From contig NW_027271849.1 of assembly GCF_040938485.1 (NCBI RefSeq), forward strand, positions 248,001-312,000: a stretch of 64,000 bases of DNA. The letters run 5' to 3'. Positions 44,298 through 58,480 of the stretch are shown here, one piece after another. This DNA comes from Diadema antillarum. Taxonomy: Eukaryota. Within the stretch, counting starts at the first letter, position 1. Every line of letters begins with the position of its first letter. A program made the position numbers and the translations under genes. The notes under the pieces were generated by a model that saw nothing but the letters and a program-made list of their open reading frames with translations, was not told where the DNA came from and ran no database searches.

Positions 44298-46867
44298 CAT
44301 CTCATGTGAAGCTGTTGTGGTTCTGTGGCTTCGACAATGGACTGTTGATCTGGGCTCCATGGTTCACGTCCCCTGGCTGCAGTGGTAGTGCCCCCAGTCA
44401 GGGCGTGTTTATATCCTCATTGCCCACTCCTTTAGAGGGGACTTAAAACCATTGGTCCCATGATTACCTGCTTACAAGAATGCTGCCCGTGCAGCCACAT
44501 AAAACATATCGTAATACAAAAAACAACAACAACAAAGAAACAAAGAAACGCGTAATATATATATATCGTCGCTGGGGTGACAAGACCTTGTATCTGCAAT
44601 TTTGGTGAAAATGACTTTTTTGGATTAATGGTCAGATAATCAGTTAAACGATGTCCTGTCCAAATCCTAGATGTCTTACCCAAAAAATGAAGCCACCACG
44701 ACATGTCAAAGGAATGTCTATCCCATTGGATACAGTGCATTGGCTACCATGTTTTTTTGCTCTCCTGAACATTTGACATTTTGTAGATACGAGGTTTTGT
44801 CGCCCCACCAGCGATATATATGTATATAATCCAGTTAAAAACCAGTCTGCCCTGGTGCAGTATGTATCCACTCCTGCACTTAAGAATGTGAGCTAGTAGG
44901 TGCTGATTTTGGTCAGTAGAAAGTATTTGTTACCACAGAATTACACCTATTCCATAAGCACATCCAGTTCTGTAAACTTGATGCTGAGAGGAAATGCTTT
45001 TATGACTTTGTTTGTACCTAGTATGTTTGTTTATATTTGTTCGTTTTGCAGAACATTCACTGCAAAAAAAAAAAAAAGTGTGTGAAATGAAGAACCTTTG
45101 CAACCTAAAGTCAGACATAAAACTGTTGTGACATTTACACTGCTCTCTGTCCAGCATTATGCCTGTCGCAACGGCCATGGTGACATCGCTGCAACCCTTC
45201 TCCAGCTGGGAGCTAATCCAAATATCCAGACGCGGTCAGGAGGGGCCACCCCTCTCCACAGAGCAGCCTACGGGGGCCACGGCGACATTGTGACATCACT
45301 CCTGCGGAGCAAGGCAGACTGCACCCTGAGGGATGGTGATGGAAAGACAGCCCTACATAAGGTGATCTGAAGGCAGTGATGCAGAGTTGTTTAACCCATT
45401 GAGGACGAGTCCCGAGTCTACTCGGGCAAGCATTTATGTGAAATGCGTGTTGTAGCAAAATCAGCCCGTCCTCAACAGGTTAAAGGGATGGTATAGGATT
45501 GGTGAAGATGAGGATTGGGCTTTTAACTTTTTGCGAGATACCAAGAAACCACTTATGAAATGGTACAGAGCATACCATTCTAAGAGGAATTCAACATTTA
45601 TTTGATGAGAATCAGTTTTGGAATGGCTGAGACGTCAAAAAACAAAGTAAAACAAGGCTCACGTATTGTAAGGAGGGTTCCACCTTTTATTAAGATTGCT
45701 CTGTTTTGGCTATCTCAGCCATTTCAAAACCAGTTTTCATCAACTTAATGTGGAATTCTTCTTAGAATTACATGTTCTAACACATTTCATAAGAGGTTTC
45801 TCAGTATCTCACTAAATATGTTAGAAACCTGAAGTTTGGTCTCAAACCAAAACTATACGATTCCATTAAGCTGACTGTAGTCAATGGATATAACAGCAGA
45901 CAAACAGAACAGTAGAGGTGTCATCAAAATCAGACATATACTTCAAAATTTACGGAGTTTTGAAGTTTCATCTTTTCAATGAATGATACTAGTCAGAAAG
46001 GCTCGTGTGTATAAGATGAGACCAAGACTGCATGGCATCACAAGCATCCTATTGCCATATGTGCCAATCACAAATTACTAAATTTCGTATTTTTCTCCTC
46101 AAAATCATTTAGAAAAAATATTGCGTCCTTTGCAGCAGAGTTTTGGTGTGTTTCGATAGCATCGCAGTAATGACTTTCAGAGGGTTGTAATTACTAATGT
46201 ATCGTCTAAGGTAAAGACATTTTGTGCTCTGGTTAACGCCAAATAGTCATGAGTAGATAACATCTTCACCTCAGCTAATTTGCATATGTAATTGTGACTG
46301 TTATCACAATTCAGTGAAAATATATGAAAATTGAAAATTCCACAATTCTCTATTTTTTGTCCACTTTCGCTAAAACTGACATTCTGTTCCTCTGATTTTT
46401 ACTCAAATTGTAAAATTCAATTTTAACATGGTATTGAATTGAACTCAACAGTCTCACGATGTGGAAAAGTGGGTCTATGTTTCTAAGATATTGCCTGGTA
46501 CGTGCCACTTAAATGAGGTTTGCCCTGGTTCAGATTTGCACAAAATATTATTTTACCATTGTTTAATTTGTTTTTCATTGTAAAAAAAAAAAAAAAACAT
46601 TTTTGTACGATATAAAAAATGAAATATTGCATGCTTTATTTCATGGATTGCATCGTTCATTTCTACTTTTGCCACCATTGGTCACTTGCATTTTATATCT
46701 CTTTGTCTCCCTTTCATTTGAAGGCTGCTGAAAAGGGTAGTGTGGAAATCTGCGAACTTCTGATCCATGCAAGTCCTGACCTGCTGACAGTTGAGGACAA
46801 CAGGGGACGTCGTGCTATCGATTATGCGAAAGACAATCCTAAACTCAGCCGGATGCTGTCAAGATGA
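43717..46867 (+). CDS. ANKRD39: Ankyrin repeat domain-containing protein 39, ~184 aa, 3 coding exons
   Basis: Exons 43717-43920 (...CCAH...[27 protein letters not shown]...DKSGYTAL), 45155-45361 (HYACRNGH...GGATPLHRAAYGGH...DGKTALHK), 46724-46867 (AAEKGSVEICELL...TGA). These match human ANKRD39 [34 protein letters not shown] and GGATALHRASYCGH. Confidence 0.95.
45395..45479. mobile_element. piggyBac-type MITE, copy 3
   Basis: TTAA|CCCATTGAGGACG...CGTCCTCAACAGG|TTAA; the right TTAA is shared with the next MITE. Confidence 0.7.
45484..45865. mobile_element. Kolobok-type TTAA MITE, copy 3 (uninterrupted)
   Basis: Homologous to 5122-7304 and shows the empty site ATGAAATGGTACAGAGC. Confidence 0.7.
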
Positions 46868-47436
46868 CAAGAAGGAGAATGAATGAATCTTGGTGGGTCA
46901 AATCATGGAGGTACAAAGAAAGAAGGAGAAACATCTATGGGAAGTACAAAGGGTTAGTCCGTTACACTGAACTCTCGAAAGTAATCCCCCTTAATCCTAC
47001 ATAAGCAATCAGCCCAGCAGGGAGCGATCGTAAATTAGCTCACGATTGACTGGGCTCGGTGTCCGGTGCTGGTTTTGGGCATGCGCAGTTATTGTATTCG
47101 GCGTTTCACCTTTGACCCGACGCCGATAGCATAGTAACATGGTGTGCGCCGTTGATTGTGCGATGTGTGTGAACAGGTGGTGGAGCATTCTCGGGCCAGT
47201 CTGCTGCTTTATGTCCCACTCGTATACATCAATGATGTGTCTTCAAGAAATACTGAGTCTGAACTATTTTTTGCCAAAACATATAAATATATCAATATCT
47301 TATTAAAGGTGCATATGGTAAATACAAACAATTACTTACAACAACAGAAAATGTCTAGTCAAGCATTTCTCTAAATTTTCTATAAAAGTAACAATACATT
47401 TACATGTATGTACATGTACATGAAGGGTACAGGTAC

Positions 47437-47475
47437 AATGTACCATGGAGGTACAAAAGACCTCCATGAATGTAC
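47437..47475. other. P-element excision footprint (25 bp of fused TIR ends between a 7-bp TSD)
   Basis: AATGTAC|CATGGAGGTACAAAAGA-CCTCCATG|AATGTAC. Confidence 0.8.
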
Positions 47476-47885
47476 ACATCAATGTGCCACTCTGGGCTGA
47501 ATTTTCCACATCAAATGGCAATTGATACGATTTAAAAAATTACAGCCTTTAACTGAATATCGTAGGCTCTTTCATCACTAAAGGAAAACAGCGTACTGAT
47601 AAATGGTTTGAGAGTGAAATAAAGAACTTCATTGAAATGTACAAATAAAATTAAGAGCATTTCTAACACTTCTCCTATTTCTCCACAAAGAGAAATTAAG
47701 TAAGTTGTTTAGAGGTTATTGTTTTTTGATACAGACATCATTTCATCGAGCTAATTTAGCTTCATAATCAAGGGTGCTACATAAATTATTTGAGCCACTT
47801 GCCCAGTCAGGCAAGCAAATTTTGAAATAATAAAAAAACAGTGGCCAGCAAATTAATTTAACAGTATCATTACATATATATATAT

Positions 47886-48964
47886 TGTAGCGAATCGCTT
47901 GTAGGTCGTAGAAAGGGTAGATCCCTCTGGTCCTGACACCATATGTGCAGCGAAGAACTTGTTTGGTGGTAGATGTGTGATGATAGATTGGTATCAAATT
48001 GAGGCCCTACGACGGAACTTCGATCAGGATGGCCGAGCTAGGTGTAAGTTCGTTTGGCCGCTATATACGGCCCAAGATACCAGTTAATTCGTGCTACCAA
48101 TTCATTTCTACCAGTTATGTACCAGTTCTCCATCAACAGTCCAACATACTAGCTTCGCACTTTATCTACTAAATTACATCTACCAATATCTTTACCACCA
48201 GTCACCACCAAGGTCCACTCACCTGCACTCGCTCAGGATTCTTTGGTAGGAAAGATTACTCTTCCAGTCACTCCTTGGTATAACTTTCAACAGGTAGTAT
48301 TTAATTCGCGAATACTTCTGCACAAACAACAGTCCAACTTGTTTCCGTAATACATGTACACAGTTCACCACACAGACCCGGTCCCATTACCTCCAAGTCC
48401 TGAACTTCCAAGTCCCGAACTTCCTGTCCCGTCCCGGCCTGCCACGTACGTTTAATACACAGATCTATGCTAGCTAGTGATCAGGAACACACTATCCTGA
48501 CCAATGCCTTACTAGAACTGCTAGTACACAGCTCGAACTTCGACAGCTCGATCCAACTCAACACGTACTAGACATGCCTACCTTATCCGTCCCAACTCGA
48601 CATCGATACCTAATCTATATTGCCGTATTATATTTTCACTCAATAATTGTTAGCGTAGTTAATCAATATTTCCACCACTAAAACACCAGTTTGGGAGGCG
48701 ATTCTTAACCAAAACCCTACAAATTTGGTCTCAAATTACTGGTATCTATTACCTCTCTCTGAATCTTAAGTCATCTTACCCCCCTAATGCCCTTATCTTA
48801 CGTAATAACCATAAAACTGACCAAAACCGTGACTTTTGGACATAGCCTATAGCAACGTTACTACCAACAACGATCAATTACACCTTAATACAATCGATAG
48901 TGAAAAATCAATACCCAGCTTATTGTATACAAGCTATACAGCGGAATTGATCGATTTCGCTACA
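47886..48964 (-). repeat. Complete 3' LTR (1079 bp)
   Basis: Minus strand TGTAGCGAAATCG...CGATTCGCTACA; preceded by a PPT-like tract at 48965-48981. Confidence 0.85.
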
Positions 48965-49781
48965 CGACCCCCCCGACCCACCAAGCTCGGTCCCCGAGCT
49001 TATACCACTTACAATCCTGAACACTTTAAACGTCAACACTTAAAACACAAACCGACCTCCATCACATTCCGACTGGTATCAACTACCAAAATACTTATAC
49101 TGGTGTCCACCACCAAATCTTTTAAAACATCATCTTATGATTTATAATAGCACTCATCATTCCTTTGGAACCATTAACACTATGTACATTTAACGCTACC
49201 TCTCCAACCTTGCCTAATACCCTTGCTTCCAACATGGGCACGACCAACTCAAAATTTGAGAAGAAGAAGAAGGCTAAGGCTCCAAAACCTGCCGTTATCA
49301 TAATATACCAATTGCAATGTGGATACCAATATGGTTCTACCAACTCTTCAAACAAATTCTACCAACACCTGGTATCGCTTCAATGACTTCCCTCCACTAC
49401 TCCTTGGAACCAATACATCTCCATACATAAGCTTCATTGATTCCAACTTAATACCATCGTTCTTTGAAAACAATTACATTGGTAATGTCCATCAATCTTA
49501 AAAAAAACCCCGTCTAACTGTAACAACTTAATGTCCAAATTAAATTGGGCAGATTATATTTAGCGTCCATATCTGCCCTTCTCCATATACCAACAATCGC
49601 TTCCACATCTTCCTTCCGGTATCCGCTACCACTTTCACTATCTTCGCGAACAATTAACTTGGTAATACTCATCAGTCCTCAGAAACATCCAATTATAACT
49701 TATTGTCCAAACTCAATTTGGGCAAAGTATGTTTAATGTCCATATCTGCCCATGCACTTCTTTTTAAAAATTTCGCTTCCA

Positions 49782-50480
49782 CTACTTTTCCTCCACGGTT
49801 TCGGTCACTACCTCCAAACACTCGCCACCGGTCGTCAAAAACCTCTCCGTCTTCCTGGTCCACGTTCGGCCAGGCCGCAACACCAGCGTCTCGGTAGTGC
49901 TGAAACTGGTCCTCCCTCTGCGACGTAATTCTCCCAGCCTCCTTCGGATAATCCCTCCGTCAATGTCGGATGGTGAGACCTGGACCCCGATTTCACATGT
50001 TACCGGGGCTTCTACTTCAGGTACCACGTTCTCGATCACCAATCGCCGCCTTCCGCCAGTCAGGTCGAAGACCCCGCTGCCATAGCTGTCCTCATCCAGC
50101 ACCGGGGTACTGCTTCTCTCAGAGGTGACGCTCCTCACCGGGCTGACACTCCTCTCCGGGGTGACGCACCTCTCAGGTGTGCGCCGGGACGGGGTTGAAG
50201 TAGAGGGGTGTAGAGAGGATCTACTCCTGGGTCTGCTTTCCGTCGACGGCGGCTTCTTATTCTTAATTAGCGCATAAACTGGGGTTTTCAAATGTACCCG
50301 CCCTGGAGCTACATCAGTGGCGTGAGTTCCGTAGTGGCGTTTTACTTCTCGCTCGTGCAGCGTCTGGAAAGCACAGCGATCACACTTAAATTTAGGGGTG
50401 TGCACGTCGAATTCGTGTCGTTGCATCGAGCTTCTACTGGAAAAGGACCGCCGGCACACCTTACAATGGTAGACTTCTCC
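49782..50480 (-). pseudogene. Retroelement-borne C2H2 zinc-finger ORF (2 fingers, Ser/Pro/Thr-rich linker); no ATG at the 5' end
   Basis: EVYHCKVCRRSFSSRSSMQRHEFDVH-TPKFKCDRCAFQTLHEREVKRHYGTH are two C-x2-C-x12-H-x3/4-H fingers. The ORF-track 'M' is a GTG inside finger 1. Confidence 0.75.
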
Positions 50481-50977
50481 CCTGTCTGACTTCTGTATGC
50501 CCGAAGTACAGGACGGGTAGTTTTCCCGTCTATGGACTTGAGCGCATGGCTTCCGTAGACCCGCAAACTTTCACCATTGTTTTTGCAGAAAATGCACCAA
50601 GACACTGAGCTGCTGAGTGGTCCATCACTTCCATCTCGTCCTCGTAGAGCGGTGATGTCTGGTAGAATCTCCTCGTTGCTCAGCCAACGGCTACCAGTTG
50701 ACAGACACCAAGTAGCATCGCCGTCCCTCCGTAAGGCCGGATACTGGTATCTCGTCCCTAGGTCCTGGGATCCACCCTTTTTCGTCACTGTCGCTTCCCA
50801 TTCGTCTAACCCCAGGTAGCTATTGAACGGGCCTCGCACCTGTTCAAAATCAAAGAACTGGTTGCCCGTCTCTTGGTCCACGGTCTTCCTCTTCTTCCTC
50901 CCCGTTGATACCAGCTTACTCAGCCCGAAATAATCGTTGAAGGGACTGTACAAATCCCCCTCTTTGGAAGATGCCAT
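50342..50977 (-). pseudogene. nanos: Nanos-like ORF inside the LTR element (NIM plus first CCHC finger; 4th ligand C->R; second finger absent)
   Basis: ATG at 50977 in a strong Kozak context (GACGCCATGG). N-terminal YSPFNDYFGLSKLV resembles the Nanos NOT1-interacting motif (e.g. FSSWNDYLGLATL). WCIFCKNNGESLRVYGSHALKSIDGKTTRPVLRAY matches Nanos C.FC.NN.E....Y..H.LK..DG...CP.LR.Y. Confidence 0.85.
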
Positions 50978-51091
50978 GGCGTCGCCTGCACTGCACCTGC
51001 ATATTAATAATACCACAGTCTTTAATCCTTGTTATTTAGCTCGTCGAATGTATTGAGTATCACTCAAATATTTAGATTCGTTACTTAGGGC

Positions 51092-51496
51092 CTAATTATA
51101 ATACTGCGGCCGACGCCTATCCCTCCTCGGATAACGCCTTCCTCCACTCCATTCATCACCGTCGTATGTCGTTGGCACAGTCGGAGACTCCCGGTTCCTA
51201 ACTGGCGATTGAGAATCCACTTCTCTCTCTTCATAGCTAGAGGGGTGAGTAGCATCAGCTTCTTCCAGCCCTGACTCTTCCAGCTCCACGTCGGCAGCAG
51301 TGCCTTGCTGCTGGTCTCCAGCCTGTACCACCTCCCTGTTTGGCTCGAACTCCCAAACCGGTCTTGGTACCCCAGTGTAGAGCTTCAACCGATCTACGTG
51401 GACAACCAAAGGCTTGGAGCGAGGCGTCACCTGGAGTTGAACAGTCACGTCAGATATTTTGGTGACTATCAGGTACGGTCCCAGCCATTTGGTCTG
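51092..51496 (-). pseudogene. Gypsy pol C-terminal (post-integrase) fragment
   Basis: LQTKWLGPYLIVTKISDVTVQLQVTPRSKPLVVHVDRLKLY is the W.GPY...VHV.RLK.Y integrase tail. It ends in RRYPRRDRRRPQYY, typical of a pol terminus. Confidence 0.8.
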
Positions 51497-52112
51497 TAAT
51501 ACATGTACACAGTTCACCACGCAGACCCGGTCCCGTTACCTCCAAGTTTCGAACTTCCAAGTCCCGAACTTCCAGTCCCGTCCCGGCCTGCCACGTACGT
51601 TTAATACACAGATCTATGCTAGCTAGTGATTAGGAACACACTATCCTGACCAATGCCTTACTAGAACTGCTAGTACACAGCTCGAACTTCGACAGCTCGA
51701 TCCAACTCAACATGTACTAGACGTGCCTACCTTATCCGTCCCAACTCGACATCGATACCTAATCTGTATTGCCGTATTATATTTTCACTCAATAATTGTT
51801 AGCGTAGTTAATCAATATTTCCACCACTAAAACACCAGTTTGGGGAGCGATTCTTAACCAAAACCCTACAAATTTGGTCTCAAATTACTGGTATCTATTA
51901 CCTCTCTTCGAATCTTAAGTCATCTTACCCCCCTAATGCCCTTATCTTACGTAATAACCATAAAACTGACCAAAACCGTGACTCTTGGACATAGCCTATA
52001 GCAACGTTACTACCAACAACGATCGTTACACCTTAATACAATCGATAGTGAAAAATCAATACCCAGCTTATCGTATACAAGCTATACAGCGGAATTGATC
52101 GATTTCGCTACA
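51496..52112 (-). repeat. Truncated 5' LTR (617 bp) fused directly to the integrase tail
   Basis: Near-identical to 48347-48964; lacks the distal ~460 bp of LTR, the PBS, gag and most of pol. Confidence 0.85.
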
Positions 52113-52139
52113 TGATATATATATATATATATATATATA

Positions 52140-52674
52140 CAGTGCACTCCCGTTATAACGAAATGCTCGGGACCGGCAGTTTTCTTTCGTTATAGCGAAA
52201 TTTCGTTATAACCGAACAAATACAATATATAACGAAAACAAGAAAACCACGTATATATATCATATTCTGTTTGCTGAATACTCATCATACACTGGAAAGC
52301 TATGTGAAATGTGATGGGATAACTGTATCACAATAATAAACGCTAGTTCCCCTCAGAAACTGTGCGTGACACAAAGAGCGAACACACAGTGGTGTGAAGC
52401 GTTCACCCATGCAGAGAAGCTATAAATGCTTGTTCCCCTACAAATTTTCGAAAGCAATTCGCATTTCGTTATAACGGAGCACATTTCTTTTGTTTTTCTT
52501 TGTCTATGGCGCTCGGAAAAGACTTCGTTATAACGGAAATTTCGCTATAACCGTGTTCGTTATAAGCGAATCTTTTACCATACACTTTTATGGCGATTAT
52601 TTTGGGACCAGAAGATTTACTTCGTTATAACGAAATTTCGTTATAACCGTGTTCGTTATAACGGGAGTGCACTG
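52140..52674. mobile_element. pogo/Tigger-like MITE (535 bp) in a (TA)n tract
   Basis: TIRs CAGTGCACTCCCGTTATAACG / CGTTATAACGGGAGTGCACTG, TA flanks, repeated GTTATAAC motifs; related to 5201-6996. Confidence 0.85.
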
Positions 52675-52707
52675 TAAATATATATATATAAACATAACAA
52701 AAATTAC

Positions 52708-54463
52708 CATCAAATTTCTTGACTTGTTGTGGAATCCTGAGTTTTCAAAGTTATTGCGACACGTCTTAAGGAGATGGGGGGCATCAATTATTAAGTAAAT
52801 GCGCTTCTGGGTAGAAGGGTGGATGAAGCTGAAGCTATCATCCGTTTCCATCAACATGCTATAAAAACTTCTGTTCGACGAAGCACCATCCGACACCAAA
52901 GCTCGAATGTTGAAGCCATATAGCTCCATTATTTCAGTGGCCTCCATGATGATGGCATAAAGTTGGTCACTAGACGCACTGTTTGTGGCAAAATATGCCA
53001 CAGTGGAATGATAGCTGTGGCAAATGCCACAAACCATGACTGGCCTTTGCAGGGGCTGCTTCCTTGGTACAAGTTCTTGCATATGACGCAAATCCATCAT
53101 TAAGAGTTCCCATGGATGTGAACCCAGTAATATGTCCTGTTGAATGGCTGTACACCAATCCTTCGATGATCTTGACCTCATCAAAACATAAGGTTGCATT
53201 CTTCTGGTGTGGCTTGAGATTCTCCAGGTTTATGTCTGTCACTATTCTGCATATGAGGTCTCTGTTGAAACCAGGGTTGTTAACAGTGAAATTGGTGTAT
53301 TGTTTGAGAGTATTGTGATGGGGAAGGGTGAGAAATCCTGAGTTTCTTAGAAGATCATATGCTGATGACGATTTCGCGTATAGGGCAATGCATAGGCGTA
53401 ATATGGCCGGATGCCATCTAGTGGCCTGAGGGTGTTCCTTCAGTCTTTTTACTTGATGGTCCCAAAGGACACGCATCGGGGAATTCTCTTCAAAATGATT
53501 GTGTACAGTCTTAGTCTCAGAAGAGACTATCGAAGAGGAAGACTGATTTTCTTCCTGTTCAAGGATTTGTGCCTTTTCCTCAAACAGCCTTGTCATTTTT
53601 TCTTCTAACGAAGTCACATGCTTCTTGAGGTTTCTTCCGTGAGCTCTACTCTGTGATAATTTTTTTGAAAGTCTTTCTTTGTTCAAATATCTGAAATTTG
53701 CTTTGGGGGCTGGTGAGTGGTCAGCCTGTAGGTGGTTGTGAAGACAGGAAAGATTAGATCTGTATATTCGACATTCTCTACACCGTGATGTTTCACTAGT
53801 TAGTAGTGGACAGGAATTATGACGAATGGTGGTCGAGTAAGCTAGATGATGAACATATACAGGTCTATTTTCCAGAAGATGGTACTCTGTGTTCCCGGGG
53901 CAGACTGAAAGCTCCCTAAATGTGCGAACGAGGCTCTGAACAAAGTCACAAGTCAATAAATTGGGTATCTCGGTGAAAACGGACTGCTTATTAACATCTC
54001 TGCCATTGACTTTTACCATCCATTCCCCTGTCAATGTCACAATCAAGCATTTCCCTGAATTTCCATCACTGTCGAGTGACAAAACATACAGTTTGGAATT
54101 CTTCTGGTTGACAACTAGGTTATGGCTTCTTGCTTCTCCTTCAATTTCCTTGAACAGTTCATCTTGTTCTCCTGGGGAGCATACCTTGCAGTCTCTTTCA
54201 TGGGGATTAAAGCTTGCGAGAGTGATGCCAATCTCACAAACCTGCTTCTTGATTCGCTTGCAATTCCATTGGTAGATCTTCCTCTCACAGCAATGGCAAA
54301 TCTGTGAAGGATGCACGGCAACATCATCGCTTGAAACATCAAGGGAAAGAGATTGTTGAATGTGTTTCTTGAATTTTTCTCTCGGATACCATCGGTTAGA
54401 GTTCTTTCGTCCACATAGCCTGCACAGAGATGCAAGCCTCCTGGTATGCAGGTCCTCTGCCAT
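52708..54463 (-). pseudogene. P-element/THAP9-like transposase with RAG1-N-like zinc-binding N-terminus; frameshift ~53040; C-terminal half not found
   Basis: The 497-aa ORF has RWHPAILRLCIALYAKSSSAYDLLRNSGFLTLP...LCFDEVKIIEGLVY (first catalytic D). It continues in another frame as MVCGI...VAYF...LVSDGASSNR (second D) ...DAPHLLKTCRN (D-x2-H motif), up to a GT donor at 52707. A splice acceptor lies 7 nt before the ATG. Confidence 0.88.
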
Positions 54464-55804
54464 TTCGTTACTAATAAAAAGTGAAAAGAATTAGAAAAAG
54501 AAATAAATATTCATGATGTATATTCATTGTAAATAAAAGTGATCAAAAATCATAGAAAGATTTAGTGTGTAATAATAGAGTGGATTTGGTGCAACATAAG
54601 TAACAATTATATCATTATTATTATCACTATCATTCTTAGAATTTCATCAAAAATCCAATAGCTATATGTATGGCACATAATTACATAGGAAAAGTTGAAC
54701 TTGAGTTTGCAATGTTCATGTTTAGATGATGGAATGGCTGCAGAACCATGGCAGAGCTTGATGGCACAGCTAGGATTGTATTTTAGAAGGGGCGGTAGCG
54801 AACATGTGAAATGTGCTCCATTCTGGCAGAGGGCAGTTTCCCCATTTTGCATGAAGGGCAACATGAACAAAGTACAAGTTTAAAAAAAAATCATAAGCAT
54901 TATATTTCGTTTCACAAAAGAATTCTTTGAAATATCATTTTAGACAGATACAATCTATATGAAAAAAAAGACACAATTTCATAAAACCCCATGTCCAGCA
55001 TGTAAACATTAAAAAAACATTAACCAAATTATTGCAATATGCGCATCGACGGATCTTGCCACGGAGGTAGAAAGAGAACCTCCATGACCATGATCTTGCC
55101 ATCTTGCCAAGCAGCACACTGACTTGGCCTACATGAGCATACGGGCGGGTCGTTCACCATTATGCCAATGAGCAGCAAGGCAATATTGCTATCAATTTAC
55201 ATGTAACACTTACACTTTTAGCTGAATTTAAGATTATGAGAAAGTAATATAATATGGCTCTTATGATATATTGATAAGAATATAAGTTAAAAAGTACCGA
55301 CACGGAACCGGAATTTCATTGTACTTTAAGATTCATTAACATAATTTACAGAGAAATAAAGAGAATATGATTACTAATACGTCAAAATACGAATATAGAA
55401 TTAACCATTTATTTTAGTATATGAATCGTAACTTACTTATTTGAAGTCCAATCGAGCTGTTTTTGGTATCAAATCGACGAGTGGCTCACTGGCTTTCACA
55501 TGTGAAAAACCTACGTTGACGTGTACACATGCGAGGCGAGCTAAGAAGCCGTACGTTGTATATGTCGTCCAGCCTTTCGATTCAGACTGTGGATGGCTGT
55601 ACGATAGAACGTCACGGTGTTGCGCATCTGTTTTCAAAGAGCTTCAGCTCAGTGCGGCTTACGAGGGGATTACGGTCTTACGTAAGAGGGCACTTTGTTT
55701 CCTGTTGCGGTGAGTTGTTTCATGTGGGTGAGGGACTTAAATAGTAATTTGTCCTCTGGGGCAAGTTTTATGGAGCTGTTTCTCCTGTCTTTTGTACCTC
55801 CATG

Positions 55805-56460
55805 GTCAAATCTATGTGCAGTTTGCATGTAACACCTGCTAACTTGCCAAATCCAACAAAACTGATCACTGAATTCGTCGACGACCGGCGGTGTGGCCTG
55901 AATATTTTGTGTAACAGCGATCATGTGGAGCTCTTTCGCAGTGTTCAGACGTAACAGTGTGGACCACTATGCTCCGTAATGAAGAATACAGCCGTTTGTA
56001 TCTGCGCTTTGTGACGTACTAGCAGTAGAGAGATATTCCCGAGAACACCGATAGGACTGTTGGCACCAAATGCATAGACTTACCTATCTGTAGGTTCGAG
56101 GGGTGACTGTTTCTTATAGATGGTGTTCAGAGTTTCTCAACTCATTATGTTCACTGACGCCCCTGTGTCAATGATAGCTGTAGTCTTGACATCATTGATG
56201 AACATAGATGCTTTGAGTTTACAATTGATTGCTCTCATCCGATGGACTTAGAGCGAACAAATAGTCCTTGTTGGTTGAACCATTTTGTGCTGCTTGTACA
56301 GATGGTTGTGATTGCGGTTGCGACTGTGAGTGTTGTGCTGTCTGTTCCCCAAGGTTGACCTCAGCTTGTTGTCTCATCCTGGTTTTACACACTCTTGCAA
56401 AATGAGCAGGTTTTTCCTTGTCTTGAAATGGGTGATCAATATGTGGATATTTGTCACCAC
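55805..56460 (-). mobile_element. Degraded Gypsy gag-knuckle/protease fragment
   Basis: GDKYPH...HFARVCK, then MFINDVKTTAIIDTGASVNIMS*...GPTLL...TCKLHID with stops and frameshifts; cut at the P-element TSD. Confidence 0.75.
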
Positions 56461-58480
56461 CATATCCTTGCTCAACTGGGATAAGGGAGCGACTAGCGAG
56501 AGCAACGACGACAGGCTTGTCGTTGGCTGGATCATGTTGAACTAGCATGGCGCACAGTCCAATGGGGCTTGCGTCTGTTACCACAGCTGTGCGAAACTGT
56601 GGGTTGAAGTATGCCATGTTGCAGTGGTCAACGATAGCACGCTTGATGTCGTCGAAGGCAGATTGATGACGATGACCCCATTCCCATGCTGCATCTTGCC
56701 TGGTAAGCATGCGGAGTGGCTCAGATAGGGTCGCTAATCGTGGGATGAAGCGTGCACAATACGTAGCCAACCCGAGGAAACTGCGCACTTCATTGCGAGA
56801 AGTTGGAGGGGGTGCATCAACTAGCGATTGAACTTTTGCTGGGCTCGGTGAAACACAGGTCGATGAGAAGATGTGTCCAAAGAACTCAATGGATGACTTG
56901 TTGACTTCACATTTCGCTTTGTGAAGGGTGAGATTCTTGTCTCTTAACCGCTGCAGGCAATCGCGAAGACGATGATCTTGCTCAGTCTGATCACGACCGA
57001 AGATGAGGATATCATCGCTGATATTGATGACACCAGGTAGGCCTGCGAGAGCTGACTGAATGAAGTTCTGGTACTGCTCTGCACCGCTGTTCACTCCGAA
57101 GTTCAAGCGTTTGTACTGAAACAAATCAGCATGAGTCGAGAACAGAGTTAGATAGCGTGAAGCTTCATCGAGCTCGATCTGATGATAGCCACTGTTGAGA
57201 TCGAGTTTAGAGAAAGCCCGGGCTCCATTCAGCTTTGCGATGATGTCATCGATGGTTGGGGTAACGTGTCGTTCACGCCTGATTGCTTGGTTGACAGCTC
57301 ACATGTCCACGCAAATTCTGATCTGATATGGCTGTTTGGGTTTCTGTACGACACGAATAGGCAAAACCCATGGTGTTGGTTGATTACGCACAGGCTCGAT
57401 GATGTCTAGCTGCTAGAGACGTTCAAGCTCGGCTTCGACACGCTTACAAACATGGAACGGTATGCGTCTATGGAGTTGCGTGATGGGCGTAACTGACTCA
57501 TCAATATGGAGCTGACAAGTTGCATCCTTCAGCTTACCCAATCCGGTAAACCGATCAGCGAATTCATCGAAGATTGATGAGTTGACCTGTCCACTGATGT
57601 TGTATGCGATGCTGATGAGCTGTAATTCACTGGACGTTGACAGGCACAGCAAGGTAGGCCCAGCATGCTGTGTGATGAAGAATGTTGCACAACAGTATCC
57701 AGACTTGTAGCGAACTGGAAGTTCGATCTGCCCAAGAAGAGAAAATGGACGAGTAGATCCAAATGCGAAGATTTGCTGGTGGGCAGGTTTCAACGCTGGT
57801 TGACGGGAAGACATTTTACGCAGGGTTGCTTCGCTCATGATGTTGACTGGAGCACCAGTGTCAAGAATAACATCGGTGTTGACACCATTGATGGAGACTG
57901 TCACGGTAGTCACTTTGTCCTTTTGGGGAGAGTTGACCGTGAAAAGGTAGTTGTCACTGTTGGGACTCTCAGCATTCACAGTGTTGTGATGTGAAGGGGT
58001 AGAGGTAGACGGTGTAACAAGTTCATCGGTCACACTCGAGCTCCCTGTGGTGTGATCATGCTGTGCTAGCACATTGACATGTTTCCTGTCACGCTGTCGT
58101 TTTCGGCAGTACTTAGCGAAATGGTTCAATTTGTGACAGTACACGCACGTTTGACCTCGAGCTGGACATGGTTTACGTGCATCATGCGGGTAGCGACCGC
58201 CACAGTTCTGACACATTGTGGTAGTGGGACTGCGATTACTGTTCACTGAATTGCTCTTACCCACTGGCTGTGGCATGGGCTGAGAGCGGTGTGATCGTGA
58301 AGACTGCTTTGGAACATAGTTCACAGATGATGATGCATGAGTTTTTATCTCATCCGCCTGTGAAGAGGCTGCATTCGCGGCACGGATGATAGACACTGCA
58401 CGGTCGAGCGACAGATCCGATTCGCGAAGCAGACGTTGTCTAATGGCTGCATTGTTCATGCCAATGATGATGCGATTCAG
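56461..58480 (-). mobile_element. Degraded Gypsy gag-PR-RT-RNaseH fragment
   Basis: IRQRLLRESDLSLDRA (gag), CQNCGGRYPH...CVYCHKLNHFAKYC (knuckles), ILDTGAPVN (protease), HRRIPFH, FQYKRLNFG, NISDDILIFG (RT), VVTDASPIGLCAML...ASRSL (RNase H); stop and frameshift near 57410. Confidence 0.9.

What the first reader, a model, noticed from the sequence alone, without database searches (positions are those of the whole stretch)
52708..54463. P-element transposase with a RAG1 N-terminal-like zinc domain in place of THAP
Seen: the N-terminus HTRRLASLCRLCG..NRWYP..LDVSSDDVAVHPSQICHCC..FNPHERDCKVC is followed by a C-rich linker (CPGN..TIRH.SC.LL..RC.EC..YR), a coiled coil and a P-type catalytic region, inside TIRs with a 7-bp TSD. 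Established: vertebrate RAG1 non-core N-terminus reads HQANLRHLCRICG..RRYP..IDVKADVDSIHPTEFCHNC..WHPHTPSCDIC; a related domain occurs in Chapaev and N-RAG-TP transposases; P/THAP9 transposases normally begin with THAP. All zinc-ligand blocks align by eye, and I found no THAP motif between the ATG and the 5' TIR. Inference: this is a P lineage that swapped its DNA-binding module for the RAG1-N domain, showing that module moves between transposase superfamilies. This bears on how RAG1 was assembled in deuterostomes.
Basis: partly seen in the sequence, partly recalled or inferred. Interest (0 to 1): 0.82.

Follow-up and report, generated by a model that had tools for sequence, protein, structure and literature searches.

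The report
RAG1-type zinc domain on P transposase
This is a dead copy of a sea-urchin P-element-type jumping gene whose enzyme begins with the two-zinc domain of the immune recombinase RAG1, not the usual THAP finger, so that domain has moved between unrelated transposon families.

Summary
On the minus strand, 54463-52708 is one exon. It encodes an N-terminal domain with the ligand pattern H-CxxC-H-CxxC-H-CxxC, a conserved middle module with a Cys4 motif and coiled coil, and the first half of a P-type RNase H domain.

The exon lies in an 8.9-kb element (46904-55804) with CATGGAGGTACAAA termini and a 7-bp duplication, ATTTGAC.

Evidence that the N-domain is homologous to the RAG1/RAG1L N-terminal zinc domain (NZD/Chapa):
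- A profile of 28 P-type N-domains matches a profile of 9 RAG1-like ones (hhalign 99.8%, E 5e-28, 105 columns).
- The best solved-structure match by sequence is the mouse RAG1 NZD, 21wb (E 2e-6).

Evidence that it sits where THAP sits: the same middle module follows THAP in THAP-bearing P transposases. Of 144 P-core proteins, 38 have NZD, 15 have THAP and none has both. All 15 NZD rows of the core tree lie in one clade (echinoderms, amphioxus, a hydrozoan).

This copy is dead: a frameshift, a stop in exon 2, and the remaining coding sequence deleted.

I found no paper describing the fusion. Two papers say the domain occurs in no transposon outside the RAG1/Transib-Chapaev group. The scan found this architecture before on other DNA of this genome (s1-215022). 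What the domain does, and who donated it, remain open.

The parts
55805..55811 (-). Target-site duplication, 5' side (ATTTGAC on the minus strand)
   Evidence: The identical 7-mer abuts the other end of the element.
55770..55804 (-). 5' terminal inverted repeat. The first 14 nt, CATGGAGGTACAAA, are perfect. An imperfect match of about 35 nt includes an AGGAGAAACA box.
54464..55769 (-). 5' non-coding region between the TIR and the ATG; no THAP-like reading frame
   Evidence: A C2CH regex over all frames found nothing real. Pfam at E<=10 on its five longest ORFs found nothing.
54124..54463 (-). N-terminal RAG1-type zinc domain (NZD/Chapa-like), aa 1-113. Putative ZFa ligands are C14, C17, C56, C59. 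Putative ZFb ligands are H6, H88, C92, C95.
53444..54151 (-). Middle module, aa 105-340: an alpha/beta domain, a Cys4 motif (C188, C218, C228, C231) and a long coiled coil. It is shared with THAP-bearing P transposases.
52852..53278 (-). N-terminal half of the P-type RNase H catalytic domain (PF21787), including the conserved D428-E429. It is interrupted by a frameshift at about 53036-53041.
52708..54463 (-).
47264..52707 (-). Intron 1, swollen by later insertions. A MITE lies at 52140-52674 (TIR CAGTGCACTCCCGTTATAACG). An LTR-bounded element lies at about 48344-52115.
   Evidence: The GT donor and AG acceptor were checked.
47437..47475 (+). Excision footprint of a same-family element: AATGTAC, then 18 nt of one TIR, then 7 nt of the other, then AATGTAC
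47174..47263 (-). Exon-2 relic: 31 codons, one codon missing and an in-frame stop. The coding sequence ends here because of an internal deletion.
46904..47173 (-). 3' subterminal region, ending in the 3' TIR (..TTTGTACCTCCATG at 46917-46904)
46897..46903 (-). Target-site duplication, 3' side (ATTTGAC on the minus strand)

Best explanation
The locus is a dead, internally deleted copy (46904-55804, minus strand) of a P-superfamily DNA transposon. It belongs to a clade whose transposase begins with the two-zinc domain of RAG1/RAG1-like proteins (NZD, also called Chapa), not with THAP.

Shown here:
- The N-domain is homologous to the RAG1L NZD over its whole length, including both sets of ligands.
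- It occupies the exact slot that THAP occupies in other P transposases. The same conserved middle module, HTH and RNase H/GTP-binding core follow in both.
- The element has P-like termini starting CATG and a 7-bp duplication. A same-family footprint inside it keeps 18 + 7 nt of the two TIRs. That is the footprint expected from cleavage staggered inside the TIR, as in P elements.
- In Hydractinia, full-length 889-aa relatives are near-identical at 5 or more loci, so enzymes of this architecture have been active recently.

Inferred, not shown: the NZD takes over THAP's job. That would mean recognising sites next to the termini (a conserved AGGAGAAACA box lies about 20 nt inside both ends) or helping to pair the ends, while the RNase H/GTP-binding core does the cutting and joining.
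For: - Architecture: one ORF holds the NZD, the middle module and the start of RNase H.
- Homology: 21wb, E 2.2e-6, both halves aligned; RAG1L of Diadema setosum hit at 1.3e-11; hhalign 99.8%, E 5e-28, 105 columns; pairwise BLASTP against the Diadema RAG1L N-end: 27% identity, E 2e-13.
- Fold: the AF2 model has pLDDT 87 and helices at 2-11, 28-39 and 57-71. That matches the H1/H3/H4 layout described for invertebrate NZDs in bioRxiv 10.64898/2026.01.24.700457. Its core superposes on ZAD domains (Z 5.9), as that paper reports for ZFa.
- THAP slot: the middle module aligns after THAP in THAP-bearing proteins.
- Mutual exclusion: 38 NZD, 15 THAP, 0 both among 144 P-core proteins.
- Clade: all 15 NZD rows lie in one clade (SH-aLRT 99), and all THAP rows lie in another (96).
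- Mobility: TIR and TSD, the footprint and the Hydractinia copies, 886-888 of 889 residues identical.
Against: - The window protein's own Pfam score for RAG1_imp_bd is 0.1 bit under the curated cut-off.
- The solved RAG1 NZD structure is not in the structural libraries, so no direct superposition was possible.
- No experiment shows that any NZD binds DNA. Its closest solved fold, ZAD, is a dimerisation domain.
- Two other NZD-P loci that I fetched (L001, L002) showed no clear TIRs.
- This copy lacks the catalytic C-half, so nothing about activity can be read from it.
Confidence: 0.85

Rival explanations
1. The N-domain is homologous to RAG1's NZD but is not the DNA-recognition module. It would act in dimerisation, synapsis or regulation, as ZAD does. 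End recognition would then fall to the conserved middle module (Cys4 motif) and the HTH.
For: The best structural matches are ZAD dimerisation domains. The middle module with an invariant Cys4 motif is shared by the NZD, THAP and finger-less P clades. Hong et al. 2026 (bioRxiv 10.64898/2026.01.24.700457) propose that the NZD is a regulatory scaffold.
Against: The domain replaces THAP position for position. THAP is the known site-specific DNA binder of P transposase (established knowledge). A clade of P transposases with neither finger also exists, so the slot may be dispensable.
Confidence: 0.35
2. The N-domain is just a ZAD-like single-zinc finger, and the RAG1 resemblance is superficial.
For: Pfam zf-AD gives weak hits in relatives (E 0.02-0.25). 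Only ZADs appear in the fold searches.
Against: The profile matches the RAG1 NZD 10,000-fold better than ZAD (2.2e-6 against 0.023). The hhalign match to RAG1L covers the N-terminal His and the C-terminal H-x3-C-x2-C, which ZAD lacks. C92 and C95 are invariant and H6 nearly so across the 28 P-type domains, and H88 is invariant among the four closest. ZAD covers only residues 12-75 of the model.
Confidence: 0.05
3. The family still has THAP on an upstream exon that is spliced in, so nothing was replaced.
For: There are 1.3 kb between the TIR and the ATG, and an AG lies 8 nt before the ATG.
Against: That region has no THAP-like frame. None of the 38 NZD-P proteins has THAP. The longer RefSeq isoforms of S. 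purpuratus, Lytechinus and Branchiostoma also lack it.
Confidence: 0.03
4. The locus is a decayed host gene (a domesticated THAP9-like gene), not a transposon copy.
For: Relatives are annotated as single 'uncharacterized LOC' genes with introns. L001 and L002 show no TIRs.
Against: There are TIRs with a 7-bp duplication and a same-family excision footprint. The internal deletion is typical of non-autonomous P copies. Hydractinia has multiple near-identical copies.
Confidence: 0.05

Closest known systems
Drosophila P element transposase / THAP9 (P superfamily)
   Same: RNase H fold split by a GTP-binding insertion domain (PF21787/21788/21789 in full-length relatives). An HTH lies before the core and a coiled coil lies upstream. 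The TIRs start CATG, the duplication is 7-8 bp, and the footprint keeps about 17 nt of TIR.
   Different: The N-terminal THAP C2CH finger is absent and a RAG1-type two-zinc domain stands in its place. This copy has lost the C-terminal half.
RAG1 / RAG1-like N-terminal zinc domain (NZD; PDB 21wb; Pfam PF12560 region 137-230)
   Same: The ligand pattern and spacing match. hhalign gives 99.8% over 105 columns. The predicted H1/H3/H4 layout lacks the vertebrate H2 helix, as in invertebrate RAG1L.
   Different: It is attached to a P-type core, not a Transib/RAG1 core. No RING finger follows it.
Chapa domain of Chapaev transposases (Kapitonov & Koonin 2015, PMC4411706)
   Same: It is an N-terminal NZD-like domain on a DDE transposase outside RAG1 proper.
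   Different: The catalytic superfamily is different. No Chapaev sequence was available to compare directly.
ZAD (zf-AD, e.g. 7po9, 1pzw)
   Same: Residues 12-75 superpose (Z 5.9, rmsd 2.3-2.6 over 62 residues). The C4 site is shared.
   Different: There are an extra N-terminal helix with His and a C-terminal H-x3-C-x2-C, forming a second site. The Pfam zf-AD score is far below its cut-off.

Membership tests
P superfamily transposase | RNase H-like catalytic domain, N-terminal part (PF21787) | tested here: met
   E 1.3e-6 and 1.5e-10 on the two frame pieces, both above the cut-off. Together they cover profile positions 2-58 and 74-136.
P superfamily transposase | GTP-binding insertion domain and RNase H C-part (PF21788, PF21789) | tested here: not met
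   Both are deleted from this copy. They are present in full-length relatives such as P0003. The family has them; this copy has lost them.
P superfamily transposase | N-terminal THAP DNA-binding domain | tested here: not met
   no THAP in the protein, upstream of it, or in any NZD-bearing relative.
P superfamily transposase | Terminal inverted repeats with a 7-8 bp target-site duplication (the TSD size is from my own knowledge of Repbase classification) | tested here: met
   14-nt perfect termini (about 35 nt imperfect) and ATTTGAC on both sides.
RAG1 NZD / Chapa domain | Ligand pattern: one N-terminal His, CxxC, CxxC, then a C-terminal H-x3-CxxC (type I of Hong et al. 2026) | tested here: met
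   Over the 28 P-type domains, C14, C17, C56, C59, C92 and C95 are invariant and H6 is nearly so. H88 is invariant in the 4-sequence alignment.
RAG1 NZD / Chapa domain | Significant profile similarity to RAG1/RAG1L NZD over the whole domain | tested here: met
   Pfam PF12560 is just under its cut-off for the window protein. It is listed in the precomputed annotations of relatives P0012, P0166, P0167, P0177 and P0178.
RAG1 NZD / Chapa domain | Two interdigitated zinc sites in a compact helical fold | tested here: inconclusive
   The AF2 model is confident and has the expected helices. However, 21wb is not in the structure libraries and the model's coordinates could not be measured.
RAG1 NZD / Chapa domain | Binds two zinc ions | not testable with these tools
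   Needs metal analysis of the purified domain.
RAG1-like / Transib / Chapaev transposase | RAG1-type catalytic core (PF12940) | tested here: not met
   the core is P-type. A search with a RAG1L core hits none of the P-type proteins.
ZAD (zf-AD) | Pfam PF07776 above its cut-off; a single C4 zinc site | tested here: not met
   12-15.5 bits against a cut-off of 28. Extra conserved ligands lie outside the ZAD-like core.

The most novel reading that the evidence does not exclude
The RAG1-type zinc domain is an interchangeable transposon-end recognition or synapsis module. It can do THAP's job on a P transposase, and it has been exchanged among P, RAG1-like/Transib, Chapaev and Crypton-like elements. 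If so, RAG1's N-terminal zinc domain began as a transposon DNA-handling module, and P-type elements of early deuterostomes are as plausible a donor as Chapaev.
Probability: 0.3. Interest if true: 0.8.

Novelty: new variant of a known kind. Interest (0 to 1): 0.66.

Why it matters
The origin and function of RAG1's N-terminal zinc domain are open questions.

The literature I could search says the domain occurs in no transposon other than Chapaev and RAG1-like elements (PMC4411706; bioRxiv 10.64898/2026.01.24.700457). Here it heads a large, multi-phylum clade of P-type transposases, in the slot of a known DNA-binding finger. It also heads a Crypton-like recombinase of amphioxus.

That has three consequences:
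- The domain looks like a mobile module.
- The case for Chapaev as the only possible source is weakened.
- Intact P-type enzymes, such as the Hydractinia copies, offer a tractable system to test what the domain does.

Tried and rejected
- Direct structural comparison with the solved RAG1 NZD. 21wb is in the sequence copy of the PDB but in neither structure library, and only ZADs came up.
- DNA of the closest relatives' contigs (P0001, P0002, P0005), to look for TIRs. No DNA was served. P0003 was not on record.
- TIR search in two other NZD-P loci, L001 and L002. Nothing convincing.
- A tree of NZD domains to find a donor. It is unresolved: P-type and RAG1L domains interleave without support.
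- Fold search and PDB profile search for the middle module. Only coiled-coil noise and weak, unconvincing folds.
- The N-RAG-TP paper (Panchin & Moroz 2008) is not held. Secondary sources only say that it encodes a RAG1-N-like protein. I suspect, from memory, that it equals Chapaev3 of Aplysia, but I did not check this.
- The 20-nt inverted repeat 47442-47461/55787-55806 first looked like the TIR pair. It is the footprint, and the true 3' end is at 46904.
- The bacterial promoter scan is irrelevant for a eukaryote.

Full report
**What is in the window**

On the minus strand, an ORF runs from the ATG at 54463 to 52970 (497 aa). Its frame then breaks at about 53036-53041. About three codons present in all relatives (V-L-T after A-S-H) are missing there. 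The reading continues in ORF 53199..52597 as far as ..N-L-M at 52708, followed by gtaat.

Relatives from other echinoderms stop or splice at the same point. The S. purpuratus model continues F-R-G-L-D-I-S-W-K-H. A relic of that next exon lies 5.4 kb downstream at 47263-47174, after an AG. It lacks one codon and has an in-frame stop, and nothing of the coding sequence follows it.

The swollen intron holds two later insertions:
- A MITE at 52140-52674.
- An LTR-bounded element at about 48344-52115, whose repeats are 96-98% alike.

**Ends of the element**

CATGGAGGTACAAA occurs three times in the window, against 0.03 expected.

- The copy at 55804 (minus strand) and the copy at 46904 face each other.
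- They extend to an imperfect repeat of about 35 nt with a shared AGGAGAAACA box.
- Each abuts ATTTGAC.

The third copy, at 47437-47475, reads as AATGTAC, 18 nt of one TIR, 7 nt of the other TIR, AATGTAC. That is an excision footprint of a same-family element that once sat in the intron. It is the pattern expected from cleavage staggered inside the TIR, as in P elements.

**The protein**

Pfam finds the P-type RNase H N-terminal domain on both frame pieces. It also finds RAG1_imp_bd on aa 35-100, at E 5.8e-5 and 23.2 bits against a cut-off of 23.3.

Relatives at 40-49% identity over 96% of the query come from S. purpuratus and from an ENA sample; a Diadema model covers 71% at 45%. The S. purpuratus protein (862 aa) also has the GTP-binding insertion domain and the RNase H C-part. 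The family is therefore P-type throughout. This copy has lost the second half.

**Is the N-domain the RAG1 domain?**

Four N-domains share invariant H6, C14, C17, H51, C56, C59, H88, C92 and C95. That is the pattern Hong et al. (bioRxiv 10.64898/2026.01.24.700457) give for type I NZD/Chapa: a C4 site, plus a second site made of one N-terminal His and a C-terminal His and two Cys.

- The four-sequence profile's best match among PDB sequences is 21wb, the mouse RAG1 NZD, at E 2.2e-6 with both halves aligned. A ZAD follows at 0.023.
- Against 1.84 billion representative proteins the profile finds 839 hits at E<=1e-3.
- Among the top 150 is a Diadema setosum 'V(D)J recombination-activating protein 1-like' of 853 aa, at 1.3e-11. 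It has the Pfam RAG1 core at 4.5e-70.
- The top 150 also include proteins with NZD, RING and the start of a RAG1 core.
- A profile of 28 N-domains taken only from P-core proteins matches a profile of 9 taken only from RAG1-core proteins. hhalign gives 99.8%, E 5e-28, 105 aligned columns, with all ligands in register.
- Pairwise BLASTP of the window domain against the Diadema RAG1L N-end gives 27% identity and E 2e-13.

AF2 folds the window domain with pLDDT 87 and helices at 2-11, 28-39 and 57-71. That is the H1/H3/H4 layout without the vertebrate H2 helix. Its residues 12-75 superpose on ZAD domains (Z 5.9), which is what Hong et al. report for the ZFa half. The solved NZD is not in the structure libraries, so direct superposition is still to be done.

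**Is it in place of THAP?**

The stretch aa 105-340 folds confidently (pLDDT 91). It comprises an alpha/beta domain, the motif C188..C218..C228-x-x-C231, and long helices.

An iterated search finds this stretch in nearly all P-core proteins collected, including THAP-bearing ones. In those it starts right after THAP, at about residue 130-145. So NZD and THAP occupy the same slot, upstream of the same module.

With my own HMMs, 144 P-core proteins split as 38 with NZD, 15 with THAP, none with both, and the rest with neither or N-truncated.

On a core-only tree of 116 proteins:
- All 15 NZD rows fall in one clade (SH-aLRT 99), together with truncated models and one finger-less subclade.
- All THAP rows fall in another clade (96).
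- A third clade has basic N-termini without either finger.

Other checks for a hidden THAP exon were negative. No THAP-like frame lies between the TIR and the ATG. The longer RefSeq isoforms add only a few residues and no THAP.

**Distribution and activity**

NZD-P proteins come from:
- sea urchins (Strongylocentrotus, Lytechinus, Diadema);
- sea stars (Patiria, Acanthaster);
- a sea cucumber (Apostichopus);
- crinoids (Antedon, Anneissia);
- Branchiostoma;
- the hydrozoan Hydractinia.

In Hydractinia, five or more loci encode 889-aa proteins that are 886-888/889 identical. That marks a recently amplified family with this architecture intact.

**What remains open**

- The NZD tree is unresolved, so no donor can be named.
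- The root of the P tree is unknown, so 'THAP lost, NZD gained' is the likely order but not a shown one.
- No NZD has been shown to bind DNA. ZAD, its nearest solved fold, dimerises. I therefore put about one chance in three on the domain serving pairing or regulation and not site recognition.

**Literature**

[quoted passage not shown] Hong et al. 2026 call Chapaev the only lineage that consistently retains it. Searches for the Chapa domain, for RAG1 with P element transposase, and for THAP9 with echinoderms found no description of this fusion.

Public annotation already holds the signal silently. PF12560 is listed on several 'THAP9' or uncharacterized proteins.

The scan itself found the same architecture earlier on other DNA of this genome (s1-215022). 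My tests here were made independently and agree with it.

**Verdict**

This is a new variant of a known kind: a P-superfamily clade with a RAG1-type N-domain. This particular copy is a broken relic.

Noticed in passing
window 47437-47475: A 7-bp duplication (AATGTAC) brackets 18 nt of one TIR and 7 nt of the other TIR of the same family. This is an excision footprint inside the element's own intron.
   Followed up: partly
window about 48344-52115: An LTR-bounded insert with repeats 96-98% alike. Its interior carries a nanos zinc-finger-like ORF (50342-51016, minus strand; Pfam zf-nanos 3.8e-8). It looks like a degenerate host-gene fragment captured by a retroelement.
   Followed up: partly
window 52140-52674: A MITE with 23-nt TIRs (CAGTGCACTCCCGTTATAACGAA) and internal GTTATAACGAAATTTCG repeats. 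It is inserted in a TA microsatellite inside the intron.
   Followed up: no
P0080 / P0280 (Branchiostoma): An NZD-like N-terminus sits on a Crypton-type protein (DUF3504 plus Phage_integrase). The Crypton paper I checked (PMC3212892) reports no domain other than the recombinase in animal Cryptons.
   Followed up: partly
window 53444-54151 (aa 105-340) and alignment A4: A conserved middle module of P transposases: an alpha/beta domain, an invariant Cys4 motif and a coiled coil. The predicted fold is confident, but it has no Pfam family and no PDB match.
   Followed up: partly
P0007, P0009, P0011, P0017: Proteins with two or three tandem NZD domains. One, from Branchiostoma lanceolatum, ends in the P-type middle module.
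   Followed up: no
window 55805-57124 and 43717-46867: The element's 5' flank is an LTR-retrotransposon pol fragment (RT/RNase H). Its 3' end lies 36 bp past the stop of a plus-strand ankyrin-repeat gene. The two flanks do not obviously belong to one unit.
   Followed up: no
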